A DNA stretch of 63,914 bases from Octopus bimaculoides (lineage: Eukaryota). The translations under genes were made by a program, and so were the position numbers. Every line of letters starts with the position of its first letter. The first letter of the stretch is position 1. This document shows positions 14,649 through 60,599 of this stretch, piece after piece. Where the stretch lies: positions 71,478,214-71,542,127 of the forward strand of contig NC_068988.1 in the NCBI RefSeq assembly GCF_001194135.2. The letters are read 5' to 3'. The notes under the pieces are model-generated. The model saw nothing but the letters and a program-made list of their open reading frames with translations, did no database searches and was not told the origin of the DNA.

Positions 14649-15010
14649 TCTCCAAATCTAAACGGAATAAACTTAACAAGAGATCAATCATACAGAGGAA
14701 GAACAAGTTCGCGTGGTTTTAAAGATATCGTAGTAAAGTTTAGAATTCTTCTGATATAGATATGGATACGGCAGGGCTATGGATACATGTATATCATACA
14801 TACATCTAAATGCTGTTCACTTCTATTCAACCAAGTTGCTATCTTTCTTGAGAGGAAATTTTATCGGACAACATTCATTCTGTCTTAAAGCTATGATTAT
14901 GAAACACAACAACCTGACGGCTAGAAATGCATGAGTAATTACTAGTTACAGGTGAAAAGAGAGTAAGTGAACATAATATTTTATAGAAATGAAAAAAATG
15001 CTTGAATAGA

Positions 15011-15324
15011 TGTTCGTGCTGCTGATCGAGGTGAGAGGGGTAACTTCCCTTGGCAAACAGGACACAGTCGTGTGTCGATAAGCCAGCTGGAGGAGATGTC
15101 CTCCTGGGGCTAAAAGCAACAGTAACATCCACCCCTAGGGGTCAGCCACACTTAAGTGGCAATATACTACACTTTATCGTGCAGTTACTGTTAATACTTC
15201 ATTTAGAGAATTAACATTGCTTGTTTTCACCTTTTCAATATCAGTGAAGAATTTCACTGGAAAAGAAGATATAAGTTTGCCAGGTTTTTGTCTCTCTCAC
15301 CAAGGTCATCAGCTGTCGAACGCC
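15011..15324 (+). mobile_element. Hammerhead-containing ~345-nt repeat, copy 1, truncated by gap inside the ribozyme core
   Basis: Starts tgttcgtgctgctgatcgaggtgag (equals the post-cleavage sequence of copy 2) and ends gtcgaacgcc at an N gap, i.e. stem I plus the first two core bases. Confidence 0.7.
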
Positions 15325-15463
15325 NNNNNNNNNNNNNNNNNNNNNNNNNNNNNNNNNNNNNNNNNNNNNNNNNNNNNNNNNNNNNNNNNNNNNNNNNNNN
15401 NNNNNNNNNNNNNNNNNNNNNNNNNNNNNNNNNNNNNNNNNNNNNNNNNNNNNNNNNNNNNNN

Positions 15464-15522
<59 letters not shown>

Positions 15523-16399
15523 ACAACGGGCTTCTTTTCATTTACCATCACCACTGACGAAGTTTTATAGCGCCTGAGGCTATGATAAAACCCAGAACTA
15601 TGTGGTTTTGAAGCTAACATTTTATCACCTACCCACCTTTTAATTATGCTTTGATCCCCATCTACAGCAATTTTGAAATTCATCTCTTTGAATAAGTGAT
15701 GAAATCCATTACCTTGTTTTACAAAACGTGTAGTTCTTCATAACAAAGAATGAGAAACACTGCAGAGAAGAGTCTCGAGCAAAATAAGTCTTAGAGTACA
15801 ATTCTGTTAATTCACAACCACAGTTCCATCGTGCAATCTCTTATCTACATAAAGTAATTTATAGCCACTATGTTTAACCTCAAAATAATCGTGATATACT
15901 AAAACTTGTTCAGCACCCGTAATATGGTTTGAATGTTTAAATATATTGAAAGAATTCTGATCCTTTCTGCAAAAGTGATTTAGTGAGAGACATTATCGAT
16001 TTTAAGAATGTTAAGCGATATAAATGTATAAATGGGCTTGTTAACTACATTACTGATGTGTCTGGTAACCGATCAGCTATTATTACATAGCAGGAAGAAA
16101 TTTAACTGTCGAGTGCTGAAAATTAGAGAATCGAAAATATTTTACTTGCACTATCTATTTAATTTTCTCAGATTTTAAACTGGTGAATGTTTTAAAATGC
16201 ATATTGTATGAAGCACTAAATTTCCTACTCTACTATCTGTTTTAACCAAGTTGCTATTGCTTCTACTTCTAAATGAATAGCTTGGTAACTGATAGAGCGG
16301 ATATCCTAATAGCCATACGTGATGTTTATGATGTGTACAACTATTAGTTTCATACAGAACTTTAGAATATTTTGTGTGAAGAAACATGAATTTGTTAAA

Positions 16400-38379: not shown

Positions 38380-38530
38380 CTTTTCTACTCTAGGCACAAG
38401 GCCCGAAATTTGAGGGGAGAGGGCCAGTCGATTAGATCGACTCCAGTACGCAACTGGTACTTAATTTATCGACCCGAAAGGNNNNNNNNNNGCGTCCCGC
38501 GTGCTAACGTTTCTGCCAGCTCGCCGCCTT
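38380..38530 (-). mobile_element. SINE family B spanning a small gap
   Basis: ctggtacttaatttatcgacccgaaagg and gctaacgtttctgccagctcgccgcc. Confidence 0.85.
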
Positions 38531-39154
38531 CCTGTTGTTCATAAATGAATGAGACTGATAACTCTGTTTGCTAACTCCAGAGAATGGGTGCCTAAGGTCT
38601 TTTTGTTTTTATTGACTTATCTATAGAGTATCAGTGAACGAATTCGTGTGACGGCAATGCGAACGTTACTTTCTTGATCCAGATACATAGCCGGTGGAGA
38701 GTTGACAGAATGAGTTGAAATCACCCCACTTTTTATCGAGCTTGAAGAGAGAATAGGAAAGTTGCCTTTGGAGGTCCCTGAATTCCGACTGCAGAGACCC
38801 AGAACAAATACCGTAAGGCATTGTATTTGACATTCTAACGATTCTGCCAATTCGCCGCCTTAGTGGTTAAGGTGTAAAGTATTTAACTTCAACGTTGGGA
38901 TATTTGTAGACTGCCCAAATTGTCTTATTGTAGAAGACAACAGCGGACATATATATATATTAGAATATAATGGAAATGCCATAAAGAAATTTATGTAACT
39001 AGCGAGATGTTAAGGAGTTAATATTTCAGAGAAGGACTCAGGAACTTGGCCACGTATGTTGTAATTTTGCAAATGTATGAATTACAAAATGTTTAGTTAA
39101 TCCTCCTACATCAATACTTCTGAATTTAGCATCCATGAACATAGATATAAGAAA

Positions 39155-40410
39155 TAGATAATGCGAAAAGTCCATAGGCCGACCATGATAAAACATGGAA
39201 TGTAACCAAATGACGATAATTTTTCAACATTGTTGGCGTTATGGTCCGCACACTTCTTCCATCGGTGTTGCAGTGCTTGAATTCCATTAGTGAAGAAGTG
39301 TTCATCCCCTTGGTAAAAAGAAGTCATCGGCAGCAGATATGACATCATCATCAATGTGAGACTGCTTCCCTGCCAAGTGGTTATTTTACATATTGGGGAA
39401 TAGATGATAGTCAGGTGGATCCAAATCAAAAAATCGGGAGGTTGATCAATCAGCTCAAAGTCACAGTCACACACAGAAGCTATTGAAATTAAGCACTTGC
39501 GGGCTGGAGCATTGTCCTGTTAAAATAAGATCCCTTTCGTCAGTTTTCCTTGGCGTTTGGTCTTGATAAACTTTTGTAACGGCTTCAGCAAGTTGACATA
39601 ATATTCTTCATTGATAGCGTGACCTTTTTCGAGATAGTCAAAACACAATGCCTTTTGCTTCGCAAAAGGCTGAGGCCATCACCTACCCTGCAGTTGAAAC
39701 GATGTTGGCTTCCGTTGATGCAGGTGGTGGGGAAGGATCTTTTTCACTGCATGAATCGTGTTTTTATCTCTAGCTGAAAGTGATTAACACAACACACATC
39801 CTGGACTAGGAAACGCTCCAGCTGGTTGCTGGATCGTCCTGAAACAAAGTCAGACTTCCCCATGATGTAATCAGCCGGGTATACATTTTATCAGGTATCA
39901 GAAGACATGACACCCTGGAACTTTGGTCATGCCAACTTCATTCTCAATTCTCTCATGGGATATGCTAAAAGATTAGTAATGTGATTTATAGTCAATCGCT
40001 TTTCTTTTCATCAGTATGTGGTGAATGTGATCACTGTTTTCCTCGGTGGTGGCAGTTGCAGGACGTCCAGACCTTATTGAAGACTCTCACTTCCCCTCCT
40101 AAATTCAGCTGCACACTTTTGCAACGTTGATAATGCTGGAGCATCATCTCCTAATGTAGCAAGCATGACTGCAAGAATATCGTTGTGTGCTAAACCTTTT
40201 TTCTACAGGTTCATGATAACACCACAATGCCAAATTTTGTTGATTTTCAAGAAAAGTCGTTATCAATTACTTTCGAAATTTTATTTGAGCAGTCAAATGT
40301 CATTTTACCTGGAAAGAAACAATGTAGATTTAAAATTAATATATGGAAGATTTCACAGATCTAGCATTGCTTCGTCGCAGCCAGCTCTTGAACTTTTCAA
40401 TCCACCCTGA
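39155..40410 (-). mobile_element. Near full-length decayed mariner element
   Basis: C-terminal QGDEHFFTNGIQALQHRWKKCADHNANNVEK, YSPDL-like region, HSR.KNTIHA/G.VMAS region and N-terminal HTH remnants; gaaaagttca-type TIR remnants at both ends. Confidence 0.8.
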
Positions 40411-40900
40411 GAGGCTGAGTTTTTCTTCCAGCTTTGTTTCGGAAATTTTCATCTACGTTTTGGAGATTTACTTAATCCGATTCATTTTTTGTTGACTTAT
40501 TTAAAGCAGACATGAATTTCAAATTTCTAATCAAGTGTTTCGGGTGCTTCCATTCCGTAAATAGTGCAAATGCGCTCTAAAATAAGCTCGAGAAGTTTAC
40601 AAAGCAAAATAGTTTTTACAAATCAAGAAACTTTAAATATTTACGATATCTATGTACTTACCAGGCACAGCATCTGTATATGTTTCAAACTATACTACAT
40701 TATATGTTTCTTTTTTAATATGAAACGGTGTTAAGTAGCAACAATAACACGCTGAATATTCCTGATACCAACGTTAAAGGTACGTGTGCCTGTGAGGAGC
40801 TCAGCCACTTGTACGGTAATTCCAAGAGTAAGCTGCTCCGTTGATCGGATCAACTGGAACCTTCACCGTCGTAACCGACGGATTGGCAGTGTGTGTAGAT

Positions 40901-44289: not shown

Positions 44290-44660
44290 ACCATGAGGCA
44301 CAATGGCTTTCAAAAACCAGCAAGTGACTTGCATCTTTTGTTGTAGATACGACATTTATATTCATCTACATGTGTTGCAATCACGTTCTGAACGCTACAT
44401 TAATTGTTCGCTCCAATGTGCCATGTTAGTCCAGATCGACTGGAAAATTCGCTACCACATACATCGCAAATCAGACTAGCTGTTAGAATTTGATTGTATT
44501 CAACATGAGGCTTTCCAGTGTGTTTTCGTAGGTGACTTGTGAAGCCCGGTCTGGAGAGGCAAAGTCTACTCCATTCACCAAACTCAAACTGAGGGTTGTC
44601 TGCCCATTGTGATTTACGTGGCTGAAACTTCTGATCAGTTTTAGGCACATGTAGCGTGAA
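44290..44660 (-). mobile_element. Three degenerate C2H2 fingers, probably an RTE-like LINE ORF 3' end
   Basis: RLCLSRPGFTSHLRKH, CDVCGSEFSSRSGLTWH, YKCRIYNKRCKSLAG(L)KSH; no TGEKPY linkers. Confidence 0.5.
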
Positions 44661-44662
44661 AG

Positions 44663-44960
44663 CAGGTGAATTAGTGGTTAGGGTATTCGGCTCACGATCG
44701 TAAGATCGTGAATTCGATTCCCAGCGGTGCTTTGTGTCCTTGAACAACTAACTTTATTTCACGTTGCTCCAGTCCACTCAGCTGGCAAAATGAGTAGTAC
44801 TCATAATTGAAAGGGCCAGACTTGTTACATTTTGTGTCACGTGGAGACTCCCTGAGAATAACGTTAAGGGTACACGCATCTGTTGAGTTTCATTCACAGC
44901 AGGCTGTTCCACTGATCGGAACAATTGGAACCCTCGTCGTCGAAACTGACGGAGTACAAT
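44663..44960 (+). mobile_element. SINE family C, tail type 2
   Basis: Core gtgtccttgaac...tttcacgttgctccagtccactcagctggc; tail ...ggaaccctcgtcgtcg; tail fragments also at 40765-40890 (+) and 54635-54720 (-). Confidence 0.8.
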
Positions 44961-49357: not shown

Positions 49358-49898
49358 TCTTTTACTCTTTTACTTGTTTCAGTCATTTATTTGACTGTGG
49401 CCATGCTGGAGCACCGCCTTTAGTCGCGGAAATCGACCACAGGATTTATTCTTCGTAAGCCTAGTACTTATTCTATCGGTGTCTTTTTGCCGAACCGCTA
49501 GCTTACGAGGACGTAAACACACCAGCATCGGTTGACAAGCGATGGTGGAGGGACAAACACACACGCACACACANNNNNNNNNNNNNNNNNNNNNNNNNNN
49601 NNNNNNNNNNNNNNNNNNNNNNNNNNNNNNNNNNNNNNNNNNNNNNNNNNNNNNNNNNNNNNNNNNNNNNNNNNNNNNNNNNNNNNNNNNNNNNNNNNNN
49701 NNNNNNNNNNNNNNNNNNNTATACATATATATACGACAGGCTTCTTTCAGTTTCCGTCTACCAAATCCACTCACAAGGATTTGGTCGGCCCGAGGCTATA
49801 GTAGATGACACTTGCCCAAGGTGCCACGCAGTGGGACTAAACCTGGAACCATGTGGTTGGTAGGCAAGCTACTTACCACACAGACACTCCTGCGCCTA
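49358..49898 (-). mobile_element. SINE family A, full length (gap in internal microsatellite)
   Basis: Head ends ccacacagacactcctgcgcc; tail tttacttgtttcagtcat...ggagcaccgcc. Confidence 0.9.
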
Positions 49899-57275: not shown

Positions 57276-57480
57276 GGCGCAGGAGTGGCTGTGTGGTAAG
57301 TAGCTTGCTTAACAACCACATGGTTCCGGGTTCAGTCCCACTGCGTGGCATCTTCGGCAAGTGCCTTCTACTATAGCCTCGGGCCGACCAAAGCCTTGTG
57401 AGTGTATTTGGTAGATGGAAACTGAAAGAAGCCTGTCGTATATATGTGTGTTTGTGTGTCTGTGGTTGTCTCCCCCCCCC
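57276..57480 (+). mobile_element. SINE family A 5' half
   Basis: ggcgcaggagtggctgtgtggtaag...ggttcagtccc; truncated by gap. Confidence 0.9.
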
Positions 57481-59139: not shown

Positions 59140-59510
59140 AAGCATCCGGACAGATAGAAGATACAAAGGCGAACAGGAAAAACAAGAAATAGATGGACAG
59201 GAATAAAAAAAAACAAAAAAACAAGGACGGGTCTTTGCTATCGTACACATCCGCTTGCTTGCGGTACACATCCGCTTGCTTGTCGTACACATCTACTCTT
59301 AGCTTAGACTTTTGATGGGACAACCAGATTTAAACAGTCTCAAGTTTAACTACCCGAATCTATAAGGACAATCTGGAAACTTGACTGAGGAGAGAAAGCC
59401 ACGAATGGCACGTACTTTTTTATCTTGTACCTCTATTTGTTGCTCTTTTCCTGTCCTCCTTTGTATCCGTCCTTTTGTGTCCGCCTTCTATCCGTTCAGG
59501 TGTTTTATTG
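59140..59510. mobile_element. Probable Penelope-like 3' remnant with degenerate inverted arms, abutting hammerhead repeat copy 2
   Basis: gatacaaaggcgaacaggaaaaacaagaaataga (~59158-59192) versus reverse complement of ~59432-59470; contains a 20-bp tandem repeat at 59242-59292. Confidence 0.3.
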
Positions 59511-59514
59511 TCAT

Positions 59515-59775
59515 ACAGTAACATCCACCCCTAGGGGTCAGCCACACTTAAGTGGCAATATACTACACTTTATCGTGCAGTTACTATTAATACTTCATTT
59601 AGAGAATTAACATTGCTTGTTTTCACCTTTTCAATATCAGTGAAGAATGTCACTGGAAAAGAAGATATAAGGTTTGCCAGATTTGTCTCTCTCACCAAGG
59701 TCATCAGCTGCCGAACGCCGACGAAGGGAAATAACCCTGAAATCCGGATACGTTCGTGCTGCTGGTCGAGGTGAG
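59515..59775 (+). mobile_element. Hammerhead-containing ~345-nt repeat, copy 2 (retrozyme-like or Penelope pLTR), tandem junction visible, truncated by gap
   Basis: 59515-59719 aligns by eye with 15119-15324 with only a few differences; after the hammerhead, 59751-59775 restarts the monomer (matches 15011-15035); then a 495-N gap. Confidence 0.7.
59712..59756 (+). ncRNA. Minimal type I hammerhead-ribozyme motif (variant core CCGACGA)
   Basis: Stem I cgaacg (59712-59717) pairs with cgttcg (59751-59756); core ccgacga (59718-59724); stem II aggg/ccct with loop aaataa; gaaa (59739-59742); palindromic stem III atccggat (59742-59749); U16.1-H17 = ta, predicted cleavage after 59750. All junctions are in canonical register except U4>C. 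Confidence 0.75.
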
Positions 59776-60599
59776 NNNNNNNNNNNNNNNNNNNNNNNNN
59801 NNNNNNNNNNNNNNNNNNNNNNNNNNNNNNNNNNNNNNNNNNNNNNNNNNNNNNNNNNNNNNNNNNNNNNNNNNNNNNNNNNNNNNNNNNNNNNNNNNNN
59901 NNNNNNNNNNNNNNNNNNNNNNNNNNNNNNNNNNNNNNNNNNNNNNNNNNNNNNNNNNNNNNNNNNNNNNNNNNNNNNNNNNNNNNNNNNNNNNNNNNNN
60001 NNNNNNNNNNNNNNNNNNNNNNNNNNNNNNNNNNNNNNNNNNNNNNNNNNNNNNNNNNNNNNNNNNNNNNNNNNNNNNNNNNNNNNNNNNNNNNNNNNNN
60101 NNNNNNNNNNNNNNNNNNNNNNNNNNNNNNNNNNNNNNNNNNNNNNNNNNNNNNNNNNNNNNNNNNNNNNNNNNNNNNNNNNNNNNNNNNNNNNNNNNNN
60201 NNNNNNNNNNNNNNNNNNNNNNNNNNNNNNNNNNNNNNNNNNNNNNNNNNNNNNNNNNNNNNNNNNNNNNTATATATATATACTGTATTTATATTCACCG
60301 ACACACTCATCTATGTCTATGTAAATATGTACAAATTGTCTTCATTTATTTATTTATATATTGATTTATTGAACTATGCAACGGGCAAACTATTTCGAAA
60401 ATATGTATTACCCACGTCGTAATGTAAATTTATGCATGATTTGTTCCAGTAGTATCGACGGAAAATGCCATTATCACCATTGTATAAATTCACAACCCTT
60501 GGATCTGTAGCTAGTTTGATAAGTTCAAATGCACCAAATTCTCAGATCTTGTTTGACTGTGTTACTCTTTCCAAATATTAATGATATACATGTACATAC

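What the first reader, a model, noticed from the sequence alone, without database searches (positions are those of the whole stretch)
59701..59775. Complete minimal type I hammerhead fold at a head-to-tail junction of a ~345-nt repeat (candidate cephalopod retrozyme)
Seen: cgaacg|CCGACGA|aggg-aaataa-ccct|GAAA|tccgga|TA|cgttcg. Stem I is 6 bp and extends past a bulge (cagctgc with gctgctg); stem II is 4 bp; stem III is an 8-nt palindrome (atccggat) too short to be stable alone but able to pair between two monomers. Downstream of the predicted cut (after 59750) the sequence restarts the monomer seen at 15011. Established: minimal type I hammerheads with palindromic helix III occur in Penelope-like pLTRs and in metazoan non-LTR retrozymes, which are tandem monomers of a few hundred nt that yield circular RNAs and cleave as dimers. 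Inference: this is a non-autonomous ribozyme-bearing retroelement family, possibly undescribed in this lineage.
Basis: partly seen in the sequence, partly recalled or inferred. Interest (0 to 1): 0.85.

Follow-up and report, generated by a model that had tools for sequence, protein, structure and literature searches.

The report
Hammerhead-ribozyme repeat family, retrozyme-like
The 75-base motif is a real hammerhead-ribozyme fold at the unit boundary of a 345-base repeat that occurs tens of thousands of times in this (probably octopus) genome, a new example of the known "retrozyme" kind of mobile element, unusual in that almost all copies carry a C where the ribozyme core normally needs a U.

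Summary
The motif is real. At 59712-59756 (+) there is a type I hammerhead: 6-bp helix I, 4-bp helix II with a 6-nt loop, an 8-nt palindrome for helix III, and a cut site after A59750. It gave 1 hit in the window and 0 in 300 shuffles. One departure: the core reads C-C-G-A-C-G-A (C, not U, at position 4), and no Rfam hammerhead model matches. It is the consensus of a 345-nt repeat with about 2-9 x 10^4 copies in the source genome, present in DNA and RNA runs of several related organisms. In about 16,000x raw DNA reads only seven hammerhead positions vary at >=1%. All seven are ribozyme-compatible: N7, H17 (A/C), two A>G changes giving G.U, C4>U (4.7%), and a compensatory U-A>C-G pair in helix III. 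About 80% of copies run through the hammerhead into a next unit. Copy A starts exactly at the predicted cut, copy B is 5'-truncated, and both are followed by a gap plus (TA)n. The unit RNA is strongly structured (z = -7). RNA-seq shows no cleavage ends and no circles beyond what tandem DNA explains. Best reading: a non-LTR retrozyme-type family, new for this (octopus-like, unverified) lineage. Whether the C4 core is active remains open.

The parts
15011..15324 (+). Copy A of the repeat, unit positions 1-314. It begins at the position equivalent to the predicted cleavage site (t15011 = C1.1 mutated, g15012 = 1.2) and runs into an assembly gap.
   Evidence: blastn. The upstream 150 nt have no similarity to the unit's 3' end (score 15 against shuffles 16.6+-2.4). 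Reads do not cover 14950-15004.
15325..15463 (.). Assembly gap (139 N) that hides the rest of copy A, including its hammerhead.
15464..15521 (.). (TA)n/(TATG)n microsatellite directly after the gap. It appears to be the tail of a neighbouring reverse-oriented SINE-like repeat (15505-15660). Candidate target of insertion.
   Evidence: The (TA)n target bias of PLE endonucleases is described in PMC8557442.
59515..59750 (+). Copy B, a 5'-truncated unit (unit positions 109-345), ending at the predicted cleavage site.
   Evidence: blastn gives 97% identity to copy A. Read depth starts exactly at 59515.
59699..59711 (+). Distal helix I, 5' strand (59699-59708), plus the 5' side of the internal loop, U-G/A-U (59709-59711; consensus T at 59711).
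   Evidence: MFE folds. Variant shares.
59712..59717 (+). Helix I, 5' strand: CGAACG.
   Evidence: The A>G variants at 59714 (13%) and 59715 (3.4%) keep the pairs as G.U.
59718..59724 (+). Core C3-C4-G5-A6-C7-G8-A9. Position 4 (59719) is C in 95.3% and T in 4.7% of genomic reads. N7 (59722) is C in 80% and A in 20%.
59725..59738 (+). Helix II (AGGG/CCCU, 4 bp, with A10.1-U11.1) and loop 2 (AAAUAA). No variant reaches 1%.
59739..59742 (+). Core G12 A13 A14 plus A15.1.
   Evidence: invariant at the 1% level
59743..59748 (+). UCCGGA. Together with A59742 and U59749 it forms the 8-nt palindrome AUCCGGAU, giving a short helix III as a hairpin or an 8-bp helix between two hammerheads.
   Evidence: Duplex energy is -12.9 kcal/mol. 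Two domains co-fold into a double hammerhead. There is a compensatory variant: T59743C (6.5%) with A59748G (6.2%), with the same read counts in RNA.
59749..59750 (+). U16.1 and H17 (A 78%, C 22%, never G at >=1%). The predicted scissile bond lies between 59750 and 59751.
59751..59756 (+). Helix I, 3' strand: CGUUCG. These are the first six bases of the next unit.
59757..59767 (+). 3' side of the internal loop (U59757) and the distal helix I 3' strand.
59751..59775 (+). Start of the next unit (96% identical to 15011-15035), cut off by the gap.
   Evidence: The junction is confirmed in reads.
59776..60270 (.). Assembly gap (495 N). It probably holds the remainder of a short array.
60271..60283 (.). 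(TA)n directly after the gap.

Best explanation
The motif is the hammerhead of a non-autonomous, non-LTR retrozyme-type retroelement family: a 345-nt non-coding unit with about 2-9 x 10^4 unit copies, dispersed as short head-to-tail arrays.

Proposed mechanism (the steps marked 'inferred' are not shown here):
1. Arrays, or read-through host transcripts, are transcribed. This is shown: the family is present in RNA runs.
2. In transcripts with two or more units, two hammerheads pair through the AUCCGGAU palindrome and cut after A/C59750 (inferred). This releases unit-length RNA with a 5'-OH at C59751. The start of copy A exactly at this site supports the step.
3. The unit folds into a very stable rod in which helix I is extended by the whole rest of the molecule (shown by folding). 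It may then be circularised by a host RtcB-type ligase (inferred from PMC7229834).
4. A Penelope-like element's reverse transcriptase and GIY-YIG endonuclease copy linear, multimeric or circular RNA into nicked (TA)n sites by target-primed reverse transcription (inferred). This would give copies with variable 5' truncation, variable phase, more than one unit per copy, and (TA)n on the 3' side.

The fixed C at core position 4 probably makes the ribozyme slow and dimer-dependent rather than dead.
For: Motif and chance: 1 hit in the window and 0 in 300 shuffles. The analytic expectation is about 2e-4 per window (my own calculation).

Architecture: it equals the 'canonical metazoan type I' form of PMC4209133, namely helix I 6 bp, helix II 4 bp, helix III 1-2 bp plus a palindromic loop.

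Family size: unitig depth is 1.1-2.7 million against 13.8-23.8 on the unique flank. Raw reads give 16,000-32,000x from an estimated 0.7-0.8x genome sample (sampling depth is my estimate).

Variation: of the 45 hammerhead positions only 7 vary at >=1%. They are N7, H17 A>C, 59714 and 59715 A>G (giving G.U), C4>U, and the paired 59743 T>C with 59748 A>G. My rough estimate of the chance of this pattern is 1e-3 to 1e-4.

Tandem continuity in DNA: about 4,100 junction reads against a depth of 8,570, where about 0.6 would be expected if all copies continue. The hammerhead junction is also seen in contigs.

Retroposition signs: copy A begins at the cut site, copy B is 5'-truncated, and (TA)n follows both copies and abuts internal AT-rich positions in reads.

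RNA: the family is present in many RNA runs, including three cyclic unitigs of unit length plus 30 nt (373, 374 and 375 nt). The unit has a circular MFE of -122.6 against -84.4+-5.4 for shuffles, z = -7.1. Two hammerhead domains co-fold into a double hammerhead at -60.5 against 2 x -27.8.

Non-coding and not tRNA-derived.

Literature: non-LTR retrozymes are 170-400 nt, of low GC, highly self-paired and PLE-linked (PMC7229834; bioRxiv 10.64898/2026.07.22.740005). PLEs prefer (TA)n targets (PMC8557442).
Against: - The core has C4 in about 95% of copies. U4C 'considerably decreases activity in vitro' (PMC3088659). A10.1-U11.1 also replaces the usual G-C.
- No Rfam hammerhead hit at any threshold tried.
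- In the raw RNA run there is no pile of read starts or ends at 59750/51 or at 15012, and no coverage dip at the site.
- The RNA/DNA depth ratio is nearly constant (about 0.012-0.014). Junction reads are not enriched in RNA (0.33 against 0.48 in DNA). This looks like passive transcription of many genomic copies.
- The library appears unstranded, so the polarity of the RNA is unknown.
- The number of variable sites in the hammerhead (7 of 45) is not lower than in the rest of the unit. Only the kind of change is informative.
- No PLE was found in the window, and the partner element is unidentified.
- The start of a copy at the cut site rests on one copy only.
Confidence: 0.68

Rival explanations
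1. Relic ribozyme. The family descends from a hammerhead-bearing element, but the U4C change disabled the ribozyme. The 95% C4 lineage then amplified as an ordinary SINE-like or PLE-dependent repeat that does not need self-cleavage. The fold is kept only because the copies are young.
For: C4 is the consensus. U4C lowers activity. There are no cleavage ends in RNA-seq. Per-site divergence is below 1% at most positions, so simple youth could explain much of the conservation. PLEs without hammerheads proliferate well (PMC8557442).
Against: The subfamily-level changes (6-22% shares) fall only on tolerated positions and include a compensatory pair in helix III. H17 changes to C, never to G. Copy A starts at the cut site. 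A canonical U4 subfamily of 4.7% exceeds the C>T level of the other CpG sites in the motif, which are all below 1%.
Confidence: 0.17
2. Transcribed satellite. The unit is a tandem satellite spread by DNA-level processes (unequal exchange, segmental dispersal). Its transcripts are processed by the hammerhead, as was first thought for newt satellite 2, and there is no retrotransposition.
For: Head-to-tail continuity in most copies, cyclic unitigs, and very low divergence that could reflect homogenisation.
Against: There are two separate short loci in one 64-kb window, each with unrelated flanks. One is 5'-truncated and one starts at the cut site. Reads show many different flanks and (TA)n junctions at internal positions. 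The gap sizes suggest arrays of only about 1.3 and 2.2 units (inference).
Confidence: 0.08
3. Ordinary pLTR. The repeat is the terminal repeat of an autonomous Penelope-like element, and the junction seen is pLTR next to the element body.
For: Hammerheads with palindromic helix III occur in pLTRs. Retrozymes and pLTRs are homologous in Xenopus.
Against: After the hammerhead, about 80% of copies continue into the same 345-nt unit. No RT or GIY-YIG ORF is present in the window. The helix sizes are not those of PLE min-HHRs. The copy number far exceeds the PLE counts reported for octopus, assuming the organism is an octopus.
Confidence: 0.04
4. Chance resemblance. The motif is an accidental hammerhead-like string in a SINE or satellite consensus.
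For: Rfam gives no hit. One core position is wrong.
Against: The expectation is about 2e-4 per window, with 0 hits in 300 shuffles. The motif sits exactly at the unit boundary and at the start of copy A. The variation pattern is compatible with the fold and includes a compensatory pair. The architecture is the same as canonical metazoan type I hammerheads.
Confidence: 0.03

Closest known systems
Metazoan non-LTR retrozymes (Cervera & de la Pena 2020, PMC7229834; Li, Clavereau & Pollet 2026 preprint 10.64898/2026.07.22.740005)
   Same: - A unit of a few hundred nt (345 here; 170-400 reported).
- GC of 45%.
- No ORF, LTR or tRNA head.
- One type I hammerhead per unit, at the unit boundary.
- Head-to-tail copies from monomers to short arrays, dispersed through the genome.
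- Highly self-paired unit RNA.
- Transcribed.
   Different: - The consensus core has C4 instead of U4.
- Circular RNA and cleavage are not shown here.
- The PLE partner is not identified.
- The copy number (tens of thousands) is far above the roughly 5,000 reported for the mussel and nearer to the axolotl.
- The lineage (octopus-like) is not reported in those papers or in the 2020 supplement.
Canonical metazoan type I hammerheads of Schistosoma Sm-alpha, newt satellite 2 and cave cricket repeats (as summarised in PMC4209133)
   Same: Helix I of 6 bp, helix II of 4 bp with a 6-nt A-rich loop, and helix III of 1-2 bp with a palindromic loop that allows double-hammerhead dimers. From my own recollection of the Schistosoma ribozyme structure, which I did not check with a tool here, the internal loop with 3 nt on the 5' side and one U on the 3' side after 6 bp of helix I is also shared.
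   Different: There is no sequence homology outside the core. Position 4 is C, and the 10.1-11.1 pair is A-U rather than G-C.
min-HHRs in the pLTRs of Penelope-like elements (Cervera & de la Pena 2014, PMC4209133)
   Same: A palindromic or absent helix III, expected action as dimers, low activity in vitro, and association with (TA)n-targeting retroelements.
   Different: PLE min-HHRs have helix II of 7-8 bp and helix I of 4-5 bp and they flank a RT-EN ORF. Here the helices are 4 bp and 6 bp and the flanks are further units.
Natural U4C hammerhead variant of a viroid (Ambros & Flores 1998, as cited in PMC3088659)
   Same: The same core substitution. It is reported to lower cleavage in vitro while remaining sufficient in vivo.
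   Different: That was a variant in a replicating RNA population. Here C4 is fixed in about 95% of tens of thousands of genomic copies.

Membership tests
Hammerhead ribozyme, type I | Conserved core C3 U4 G5 A6 N7 G8 A9 / G12 A13 A14 | tested here: not met
   12 of 13 core positions match. Position 4 is C in the window and in 95.3% of about 13,000 genomic reads; T makes up 4.7%.
Hammerhead ribozyme, type I | Three helices around the core, helix I open; A15.1-U16.1 pair; H17 not G | tested here: met
   Helix I is 6 bp, helix II is 4 bp, and helix III is an A-U pair plus a palindrome. H17 is A (78%) or C (22%).
Hammerhead ribozyme, type I | Match to the curated covariance models (Rfam Hammerhead_1 and related) | tested here: not met
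   No hammerhead hit at gathering score on the whole window, nor at E<=10 on 491 nt or on 81 nt.
Hammerhead ribozyme, type I | Helices supported by covariation among copies | tested here: inconclusive
   Helix III shows U-A > C-G at equal frequencies in DNA and equal read counts in RNA. Helix I shows only A-U > G.U changes. Helix II is invariant. Distal helix I forms in every haplotype combination, but linkage is unknown.
Hammerhead ribozyme, type I | Site-specific self-cleavage | tested here: inconclusive
   There is no pile of RNA read ends and no coverage dip at 59750/51 in one unstranded RNA-seq run. One genomic copy starts at the site. A biochemical assay is not possible with these tools.
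Metazoan non-LTR retrozyme | Head-to-tail repeats of about 170-400 nt, each with a type I hammerhead; low GC; no LTR, PBS, PPT or ORF | tested here: met
   The unit is 345 nt with GC 44.9%. The longest ORF in a trimer is 54 aa. Junction reads indicate that about 80% of copies continue into a next unit.
Metazoan non-LTR retrozyme | Highly self-paired unit RNA | tested here: met
   The circular MFE is -122.6 kcal/mol, z = -7.1 against 200 dinucleotide shuffles.
Metazoan non-LTR retrozyme | Expressed as unit-length linear and circular RNA | tested here: inconclusive
   RNA reads and cyclic unitigs of 373-375 nt exist. However, the same junction is in DNA and is not enriched in RNA (0.33 against 0.48).
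Metazoan non-LTR retrozyme | Co-occurrence with, and homology to, the pLTRs of Penelope-like elements | not testable with these tools
   No PLE is in the window and the host genome cannot be searched. Octopus genomes are reported to hold Penelope elements, but the organism is unverified.
PLE pLTR min-HHR | Lies in direct repeats flanking a RT / GIY-YIG ORF; helix II 7-8 bp, helix I 4-5 bp | tested here: not met
   Copies show unit-to-unit continuity. No such ORF is present. Helix II is 4 bp and helix I is 6 bp.
tRNA-derived SINE | tRNA-like head with Pol III A and B boxes | tested here: not met
   ARAGORN finds nothing on a dimer. The only box-like strings have 2 mismatches each and lie on opposite strands.

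The most novel reading that the evidence does not exclude
A retrozyme lineage has fixed a non-canonical C4 hammerhead core in about 95% of tens of thousands of copies and still self-cleaves, slowly and only as a dimer. It would be a natural, massively amplified U4C hammerhead that standard descriptors and Rfam models cannot see. Part of what octopus genome papers list as 'unclassified SINEs' would then be ribozyme-bearing, PLE-driven elements that insert into the (TA)n tails of other SINEs.
Probability: 0.3. Interest if true: 0.62.

Novelty: new member of a known kind. Interest (0 to 1): 0.5.

Why it matters
If the reading holds, retrozymes extend to a lineage whose repeat content is dominated by 'SINEs' of unclear origin. 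One abundant family there would then have a concrete mechanism: hammerhead processing plus Penelope-type integration at (TA)n. The fixed C4 core is the more interesting point.
- If the ribozyme still cuts, the natural sequence space of hammerheads is wider than current search models assume, and similar families are being missed.
- If it does not cut, a retrozyme can amplify to tens of thousands of copies without its ribozyme. That bears directly on the open question of what the hammerhead contributes to PLE and retrozyme mobility.

Both outcomes can be tested with a simple C4 versus U4 dimer cleavage assay.

Tried and rejected
- Rfam at gathering score on the whole window, and at E<=10 on 491 nt and on 81 nt: no hammerhead family was reported.
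- Fetching more genomic copies for a proper alignment and covariance test. Exact-pattern scans of metagenome (twice), genome and viral collections found nothing. Covariation therefore had to be read from marginal variant frequencies in reads.
- Covariation in distal helix I. Three 3'-strand and two or three 5'-strand haplotypes were rebuilt from loose ends. Every combination folds into a helix and non-cognate pairs are not worse, so without linkage this is uninformative.
- Measuring what share of copies start at the cut site. The loose-end table of the last read-laying run did not list position 15012, so this remains a single observation.
- Depth profile of the raw DNA run. It is distorted by a linker-based, Hi-C-like library, so it was not used to infer truncation gradients.
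- Organism identification. One ORF gave no homologues and Pfam found only a weak C2H2 finger. A decayed mariner gave unnamed hits plus a Haliotis SETMAR-like protein, which points to a mollusc but no further.
- tRNA-SINE origin: rejected.
- A decayed older unit upstream of copy A: rejected.
- Further copies in the window by sensitive blastn: none.

Full report
**1. What is in the sequence**

Positions 59712-59756 on the + strand read CGAACG | CCGACGA | AGGG-AAATAA-CCCT | GAAA | TCCGGA | T A | CGTTCG. In hammerhead numbering the parts are:
- helix I, 6 bp;
- core positions 3-9;
- helix II, 4 bp with a 6-nt loop;
- G12 A13 A14 A15.1;
- a 6-nt palindrome flanked by A15.1 and U16.1, so that AUCCGGAU is an 8-nt palindrome;
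- H17 = A59750;
- the 3' strand of helix I.

The only departure from the consensus core is C instead of U at position 4 (59719). The 10.1-11.1 pair is A-U.

A descriptor written for this architecture finds this site and nothing else on either strand of the window. It finds nothing in 300 composition-preserving shuffles, and nothing at all if U4 is required. My analytic estimate is about 2e-4 chance hits per window.

Rfam reports no hammerhead family. This holds at gathering score on the whole window, and at E<=10 on 491 nt or on 81 nt around the motif.

**2. The repeat**

blastn of the window against itself gives two copies.
- Copy A is 15012-15324. It then runs into a 139-N gap.
- Copy B is 59515-59750 (97% identical to A). 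It is followed by 59751-59775, which repeats the first 25 nt of copy A (96%), and then by a 495-N gap.

The composite unit is 345 nt, has 44.9% GC, and has no ORF above 54 aa even in a trimer. It has no tRNA-like part and no credible Pol III boxes.

The 150 nt upstream of copy A are unrelated to the unit's 3' end (score 15 against 16.6+-2.4 for shuffles). Copy A therefore truly begins within one base of the predicted scissile bond. Copy B is 5'-truncated at unit position 109.

Both gaps are followed directly by (TA)n. At copy A that microsatellite looks like the tail of a neighbouring SINE-like repeat. That repeat has diverged copies at 49726-49799 and 57285-57445.

**3. The family, seen through public reads**

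Organism names are coded. The repeat is held by DNA runs of 'organism A' from 2015 to 2026 and by RNA runs of organisms A and B. Runs of organisms F and G, whose type is not on record, hold it as well.

Copy number:
- On copy A, unitig depth is 13.8 or 23.8 on the unique flank, against 1.1-2.7 million on the repeat. Taken at face value that is about 9 x 10^4 copies.
- Overlapping short unitigs inflate this figure.
- Raw reads from what I estimate is a 0.7-0.8x sample of the genome give 16,000-32,000x, that is 2-4 x 10^4 copies.
- Two loci in a 64-kb window fit a dispersed family of that size.

Continuity across the unit boundary:
- Raw DNA reads join 15324 to 15012 through the 32 nt GACGAAGGGAAATAACCCTGAAATCCGGATAC (1,566 reads), or the same with ...GGATCC (331 reads).
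- Further reads join 15324 to 15046 in subfamilies with a diverged unit start.
- Together there are about 4,100 junction reads against a depth of 8,570.
- Read geometry allows about 0.6 if every copy continued, so roughly 80% of copies run through the hammerhead into a next unit.

The bulk of the family is therefore unit-to-unit, not pLTR-to-ORF, and not a 30-40 nt 'tail'.

**4. Variation in the hammerhead**

I laid about 13,000-16,000x raw DNA reads on 59696-59775 and listed every variant of 1% or more. Within the 45-nt hammerhead only seven positions vary:

| Position | Change | Share | Effect |
|---|---|---|---|
| 59714 | A>G | 13% | A-U becomes G.U |
| 59715 | A>G | 3.4% | A-U becomes G.U |
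| 59719 | C>T | 4.7% | restores canonical U4 |
| 59722 | C>A | 20% | N7, the free core position |
| 59743 | T>C | 6.5% | together these turn U-A into C-G |
| 59748 | A>G | 6.2% | and keep the palindrome |
| 59750 | A>C | 22% | H17; both letters allowed, G absent |

- The two helix III changes have identical read counts in RNA (9 and 6 in the two orientations).
- All other positions, including loop 2 and five other CpG sites, are below 1%.
- Counting which single changes a hammerhead tolerates (about 27% of all possible changes), five tolerated single changes plus one exact compensatory pair has a chance of roughly 1e-3 to 1e-4. This is my own post-hoc calculation.
- The number of variable sites is not lower than elsewhere in the unit. 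Only the kind of change is telling.
- The very low random divergence means the family is young or homogenised.
- The family consensus at 59711 is T. The window copy is the odd one there.

**5. Beyond helix I**

- The unit RNA has a circular minimum free energy of -122.6 kcal/mol against -84.4+-5.4 for dinucleotide shuffles, z = -7.1.
- In that fold helix I continues, after an internal loop (5' U-G/A-U, 3' U), into a long rod. The rod is formed by the first about 35 nt and the last about 60 nt of the unit before the core.
- Subfamily haplotypes of both strands can all form the distal helix. Without linkage this says nothing about covariation.
- Two hammerhead domains co-fold into the classical double hammerhead through the 8-bp palindrome: -60.5 against 2 x -27.8 kcal/mol.

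**6. RNA evidence**

- The family is present in many RNA runs.
- Three assemblies give a cyclic unitig of unit length plus 30 nt: 373 and 375 nt in two RNA runs (organisms A and B) and 374 nt in an organism G run of unrecorded type. Tandem DNA would give the same result.
- In the one raw RNA run used (150-nt pairs, apparently unstranded), coverage of the repeat tracks DNA copy representation, with a ratio of about 0.012-0.014.
- There is no dip across 59750/51 and no pile of read starts or ends there or at 15012.
- Junction reads are, if anything, fewer than in DNA (45 against a depth of 136, or 0.33, compared with 0.48).
- Many reads run on into unrelated flanks.

There is thus no positive evidence for cleavage or for circles in these data. 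The signal looks like transcription of many dispersed copies. Poly(A) selection could hide circles, and the library type is not stated.

**7. Interpretation**

The features shown here are:
- hammerhead architecture;
- position at the unit boundary;
- fold-compatible variation;
- a non-coding structured unit;
- short dispersed head-to-tail arrays;
- 5' truncation;
- a copy starting at the cut site;
- (TA)n on the 3' side, and (TA)n abutting internal AT-rich positions in reads.

These match the non-LTR retrozymes of animals (PMC7229834; preprint 10.64898/2026.07.22.740005) and the (TA)n target bias of Penelope-like endonucleases (PMC8557442).

The helix sizes are those of 'canonical metazoan type I' hammerheads, not of pLTR min-HHRs (PMC4209133).

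The main uncertainty is the C4 core. U4C is reported to lower activity considerably in vitro yet to suffice in vivo in a viroid (PMC3088659, citing Ambros & Flores 1998, which I could not read).

I put 0.68 on an active or recently active retrozyme-type family and 0.17 on a relic ribozyme in a family that no longer needs it. The rest is split between satellite, pLTR and chance.

**8. Novelty**

Retrozymes are known from cnidarians to amphibians, including a mussel. In the held literature I found no report of hammerheads or retrozymes in octopus or other cephalopods. Recent octopus repeat papers list hundreds of 'unclassified SINE' families without mentioning ribozymes.

That the window is from an octopus rests on indirect signs only:
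- 35.6% GC;
- abundant (TA)n;
- a genome of about 2.1-2.5 Gb by contig totals;
- DNA and multi-tissue RNA runs from 2015;
- heavy A>G change in RNA;
- a mollusc-like mariner.

I file it as a new member of a known kind, with an unusual fixed core variant.

Noticed in passing
window 15012-15324 and 59515-59775 (family-wide, in reads): RNA reads show many low-frequency A>G (22 sites) and T>C (18 sites) differences that DNA contigs of the same organism lack (3 and 1 sites). This is the signature of A-to-I editing of repeat-derived double-stranded RNA.
   Followed up: partly
window 15464-15660; also 49726-49799 and 57285-57445: A different SINE-like repeat, in reverse orientation, carries a (TA)n/(TATG)n tail next to copy A. 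It has three diverged copies in the window. Many of the window's 20 N gaps sit beside such (TA)n or (CA)n runs.
   Followed up: partly
window about 38500-40600, - strand: A decayed mariner/Tc1-type transposase with frameshifts and stops. Relatives carry Pfam PF01359. The best named relative is a SETMAR-like protein of the abalone Haliotis.
   Followed up: partly
window 44400-44747, - strand: An ORF fragment with a weak C2H2 zinc-finger match (22 bits, below Pfam's cut-off).
   Followed up: no
window 59240-59292: Three tandem copies of a roughly 21-nt unit (CGTACACATCCGCTTGCTTG) about 220 nt upstream of copy B. There is also a short inverted match between 59160-59210 and 59416-59467.
   Followed up: no
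runs X37, X38 (organisms F, G) on window 59515-59775: In two other organisms the repeat appears as only a few clean contigs (depth 119-368), one of them a 374-nt cyclic unitig. These are near-identical to the organism A consensus, and the hammerhead is unchanged. This could mean a shared family, low copy number, RNA libraries or cross-sample carry-over.
   Followed up: no
run X46 (raw DNA reads): Reads carry a palindromic linker (GGTTCGTCCATCGATCGATGGACGAACC) at preferred cut sites inside the repeat. The library is therefore proximity-ligation-like and its depth profile is biased.
   Followed up: partly
window 59719 (family-wide): The canonical-core (U4) variant makes up 4.7% of copies, whereas C>T at the other CpG sites of the motif is below 1%. 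It is probably an amplified subfamily, of the order of a thousand copies, that standard hammerhead searches would detect.
   Followed up: partly
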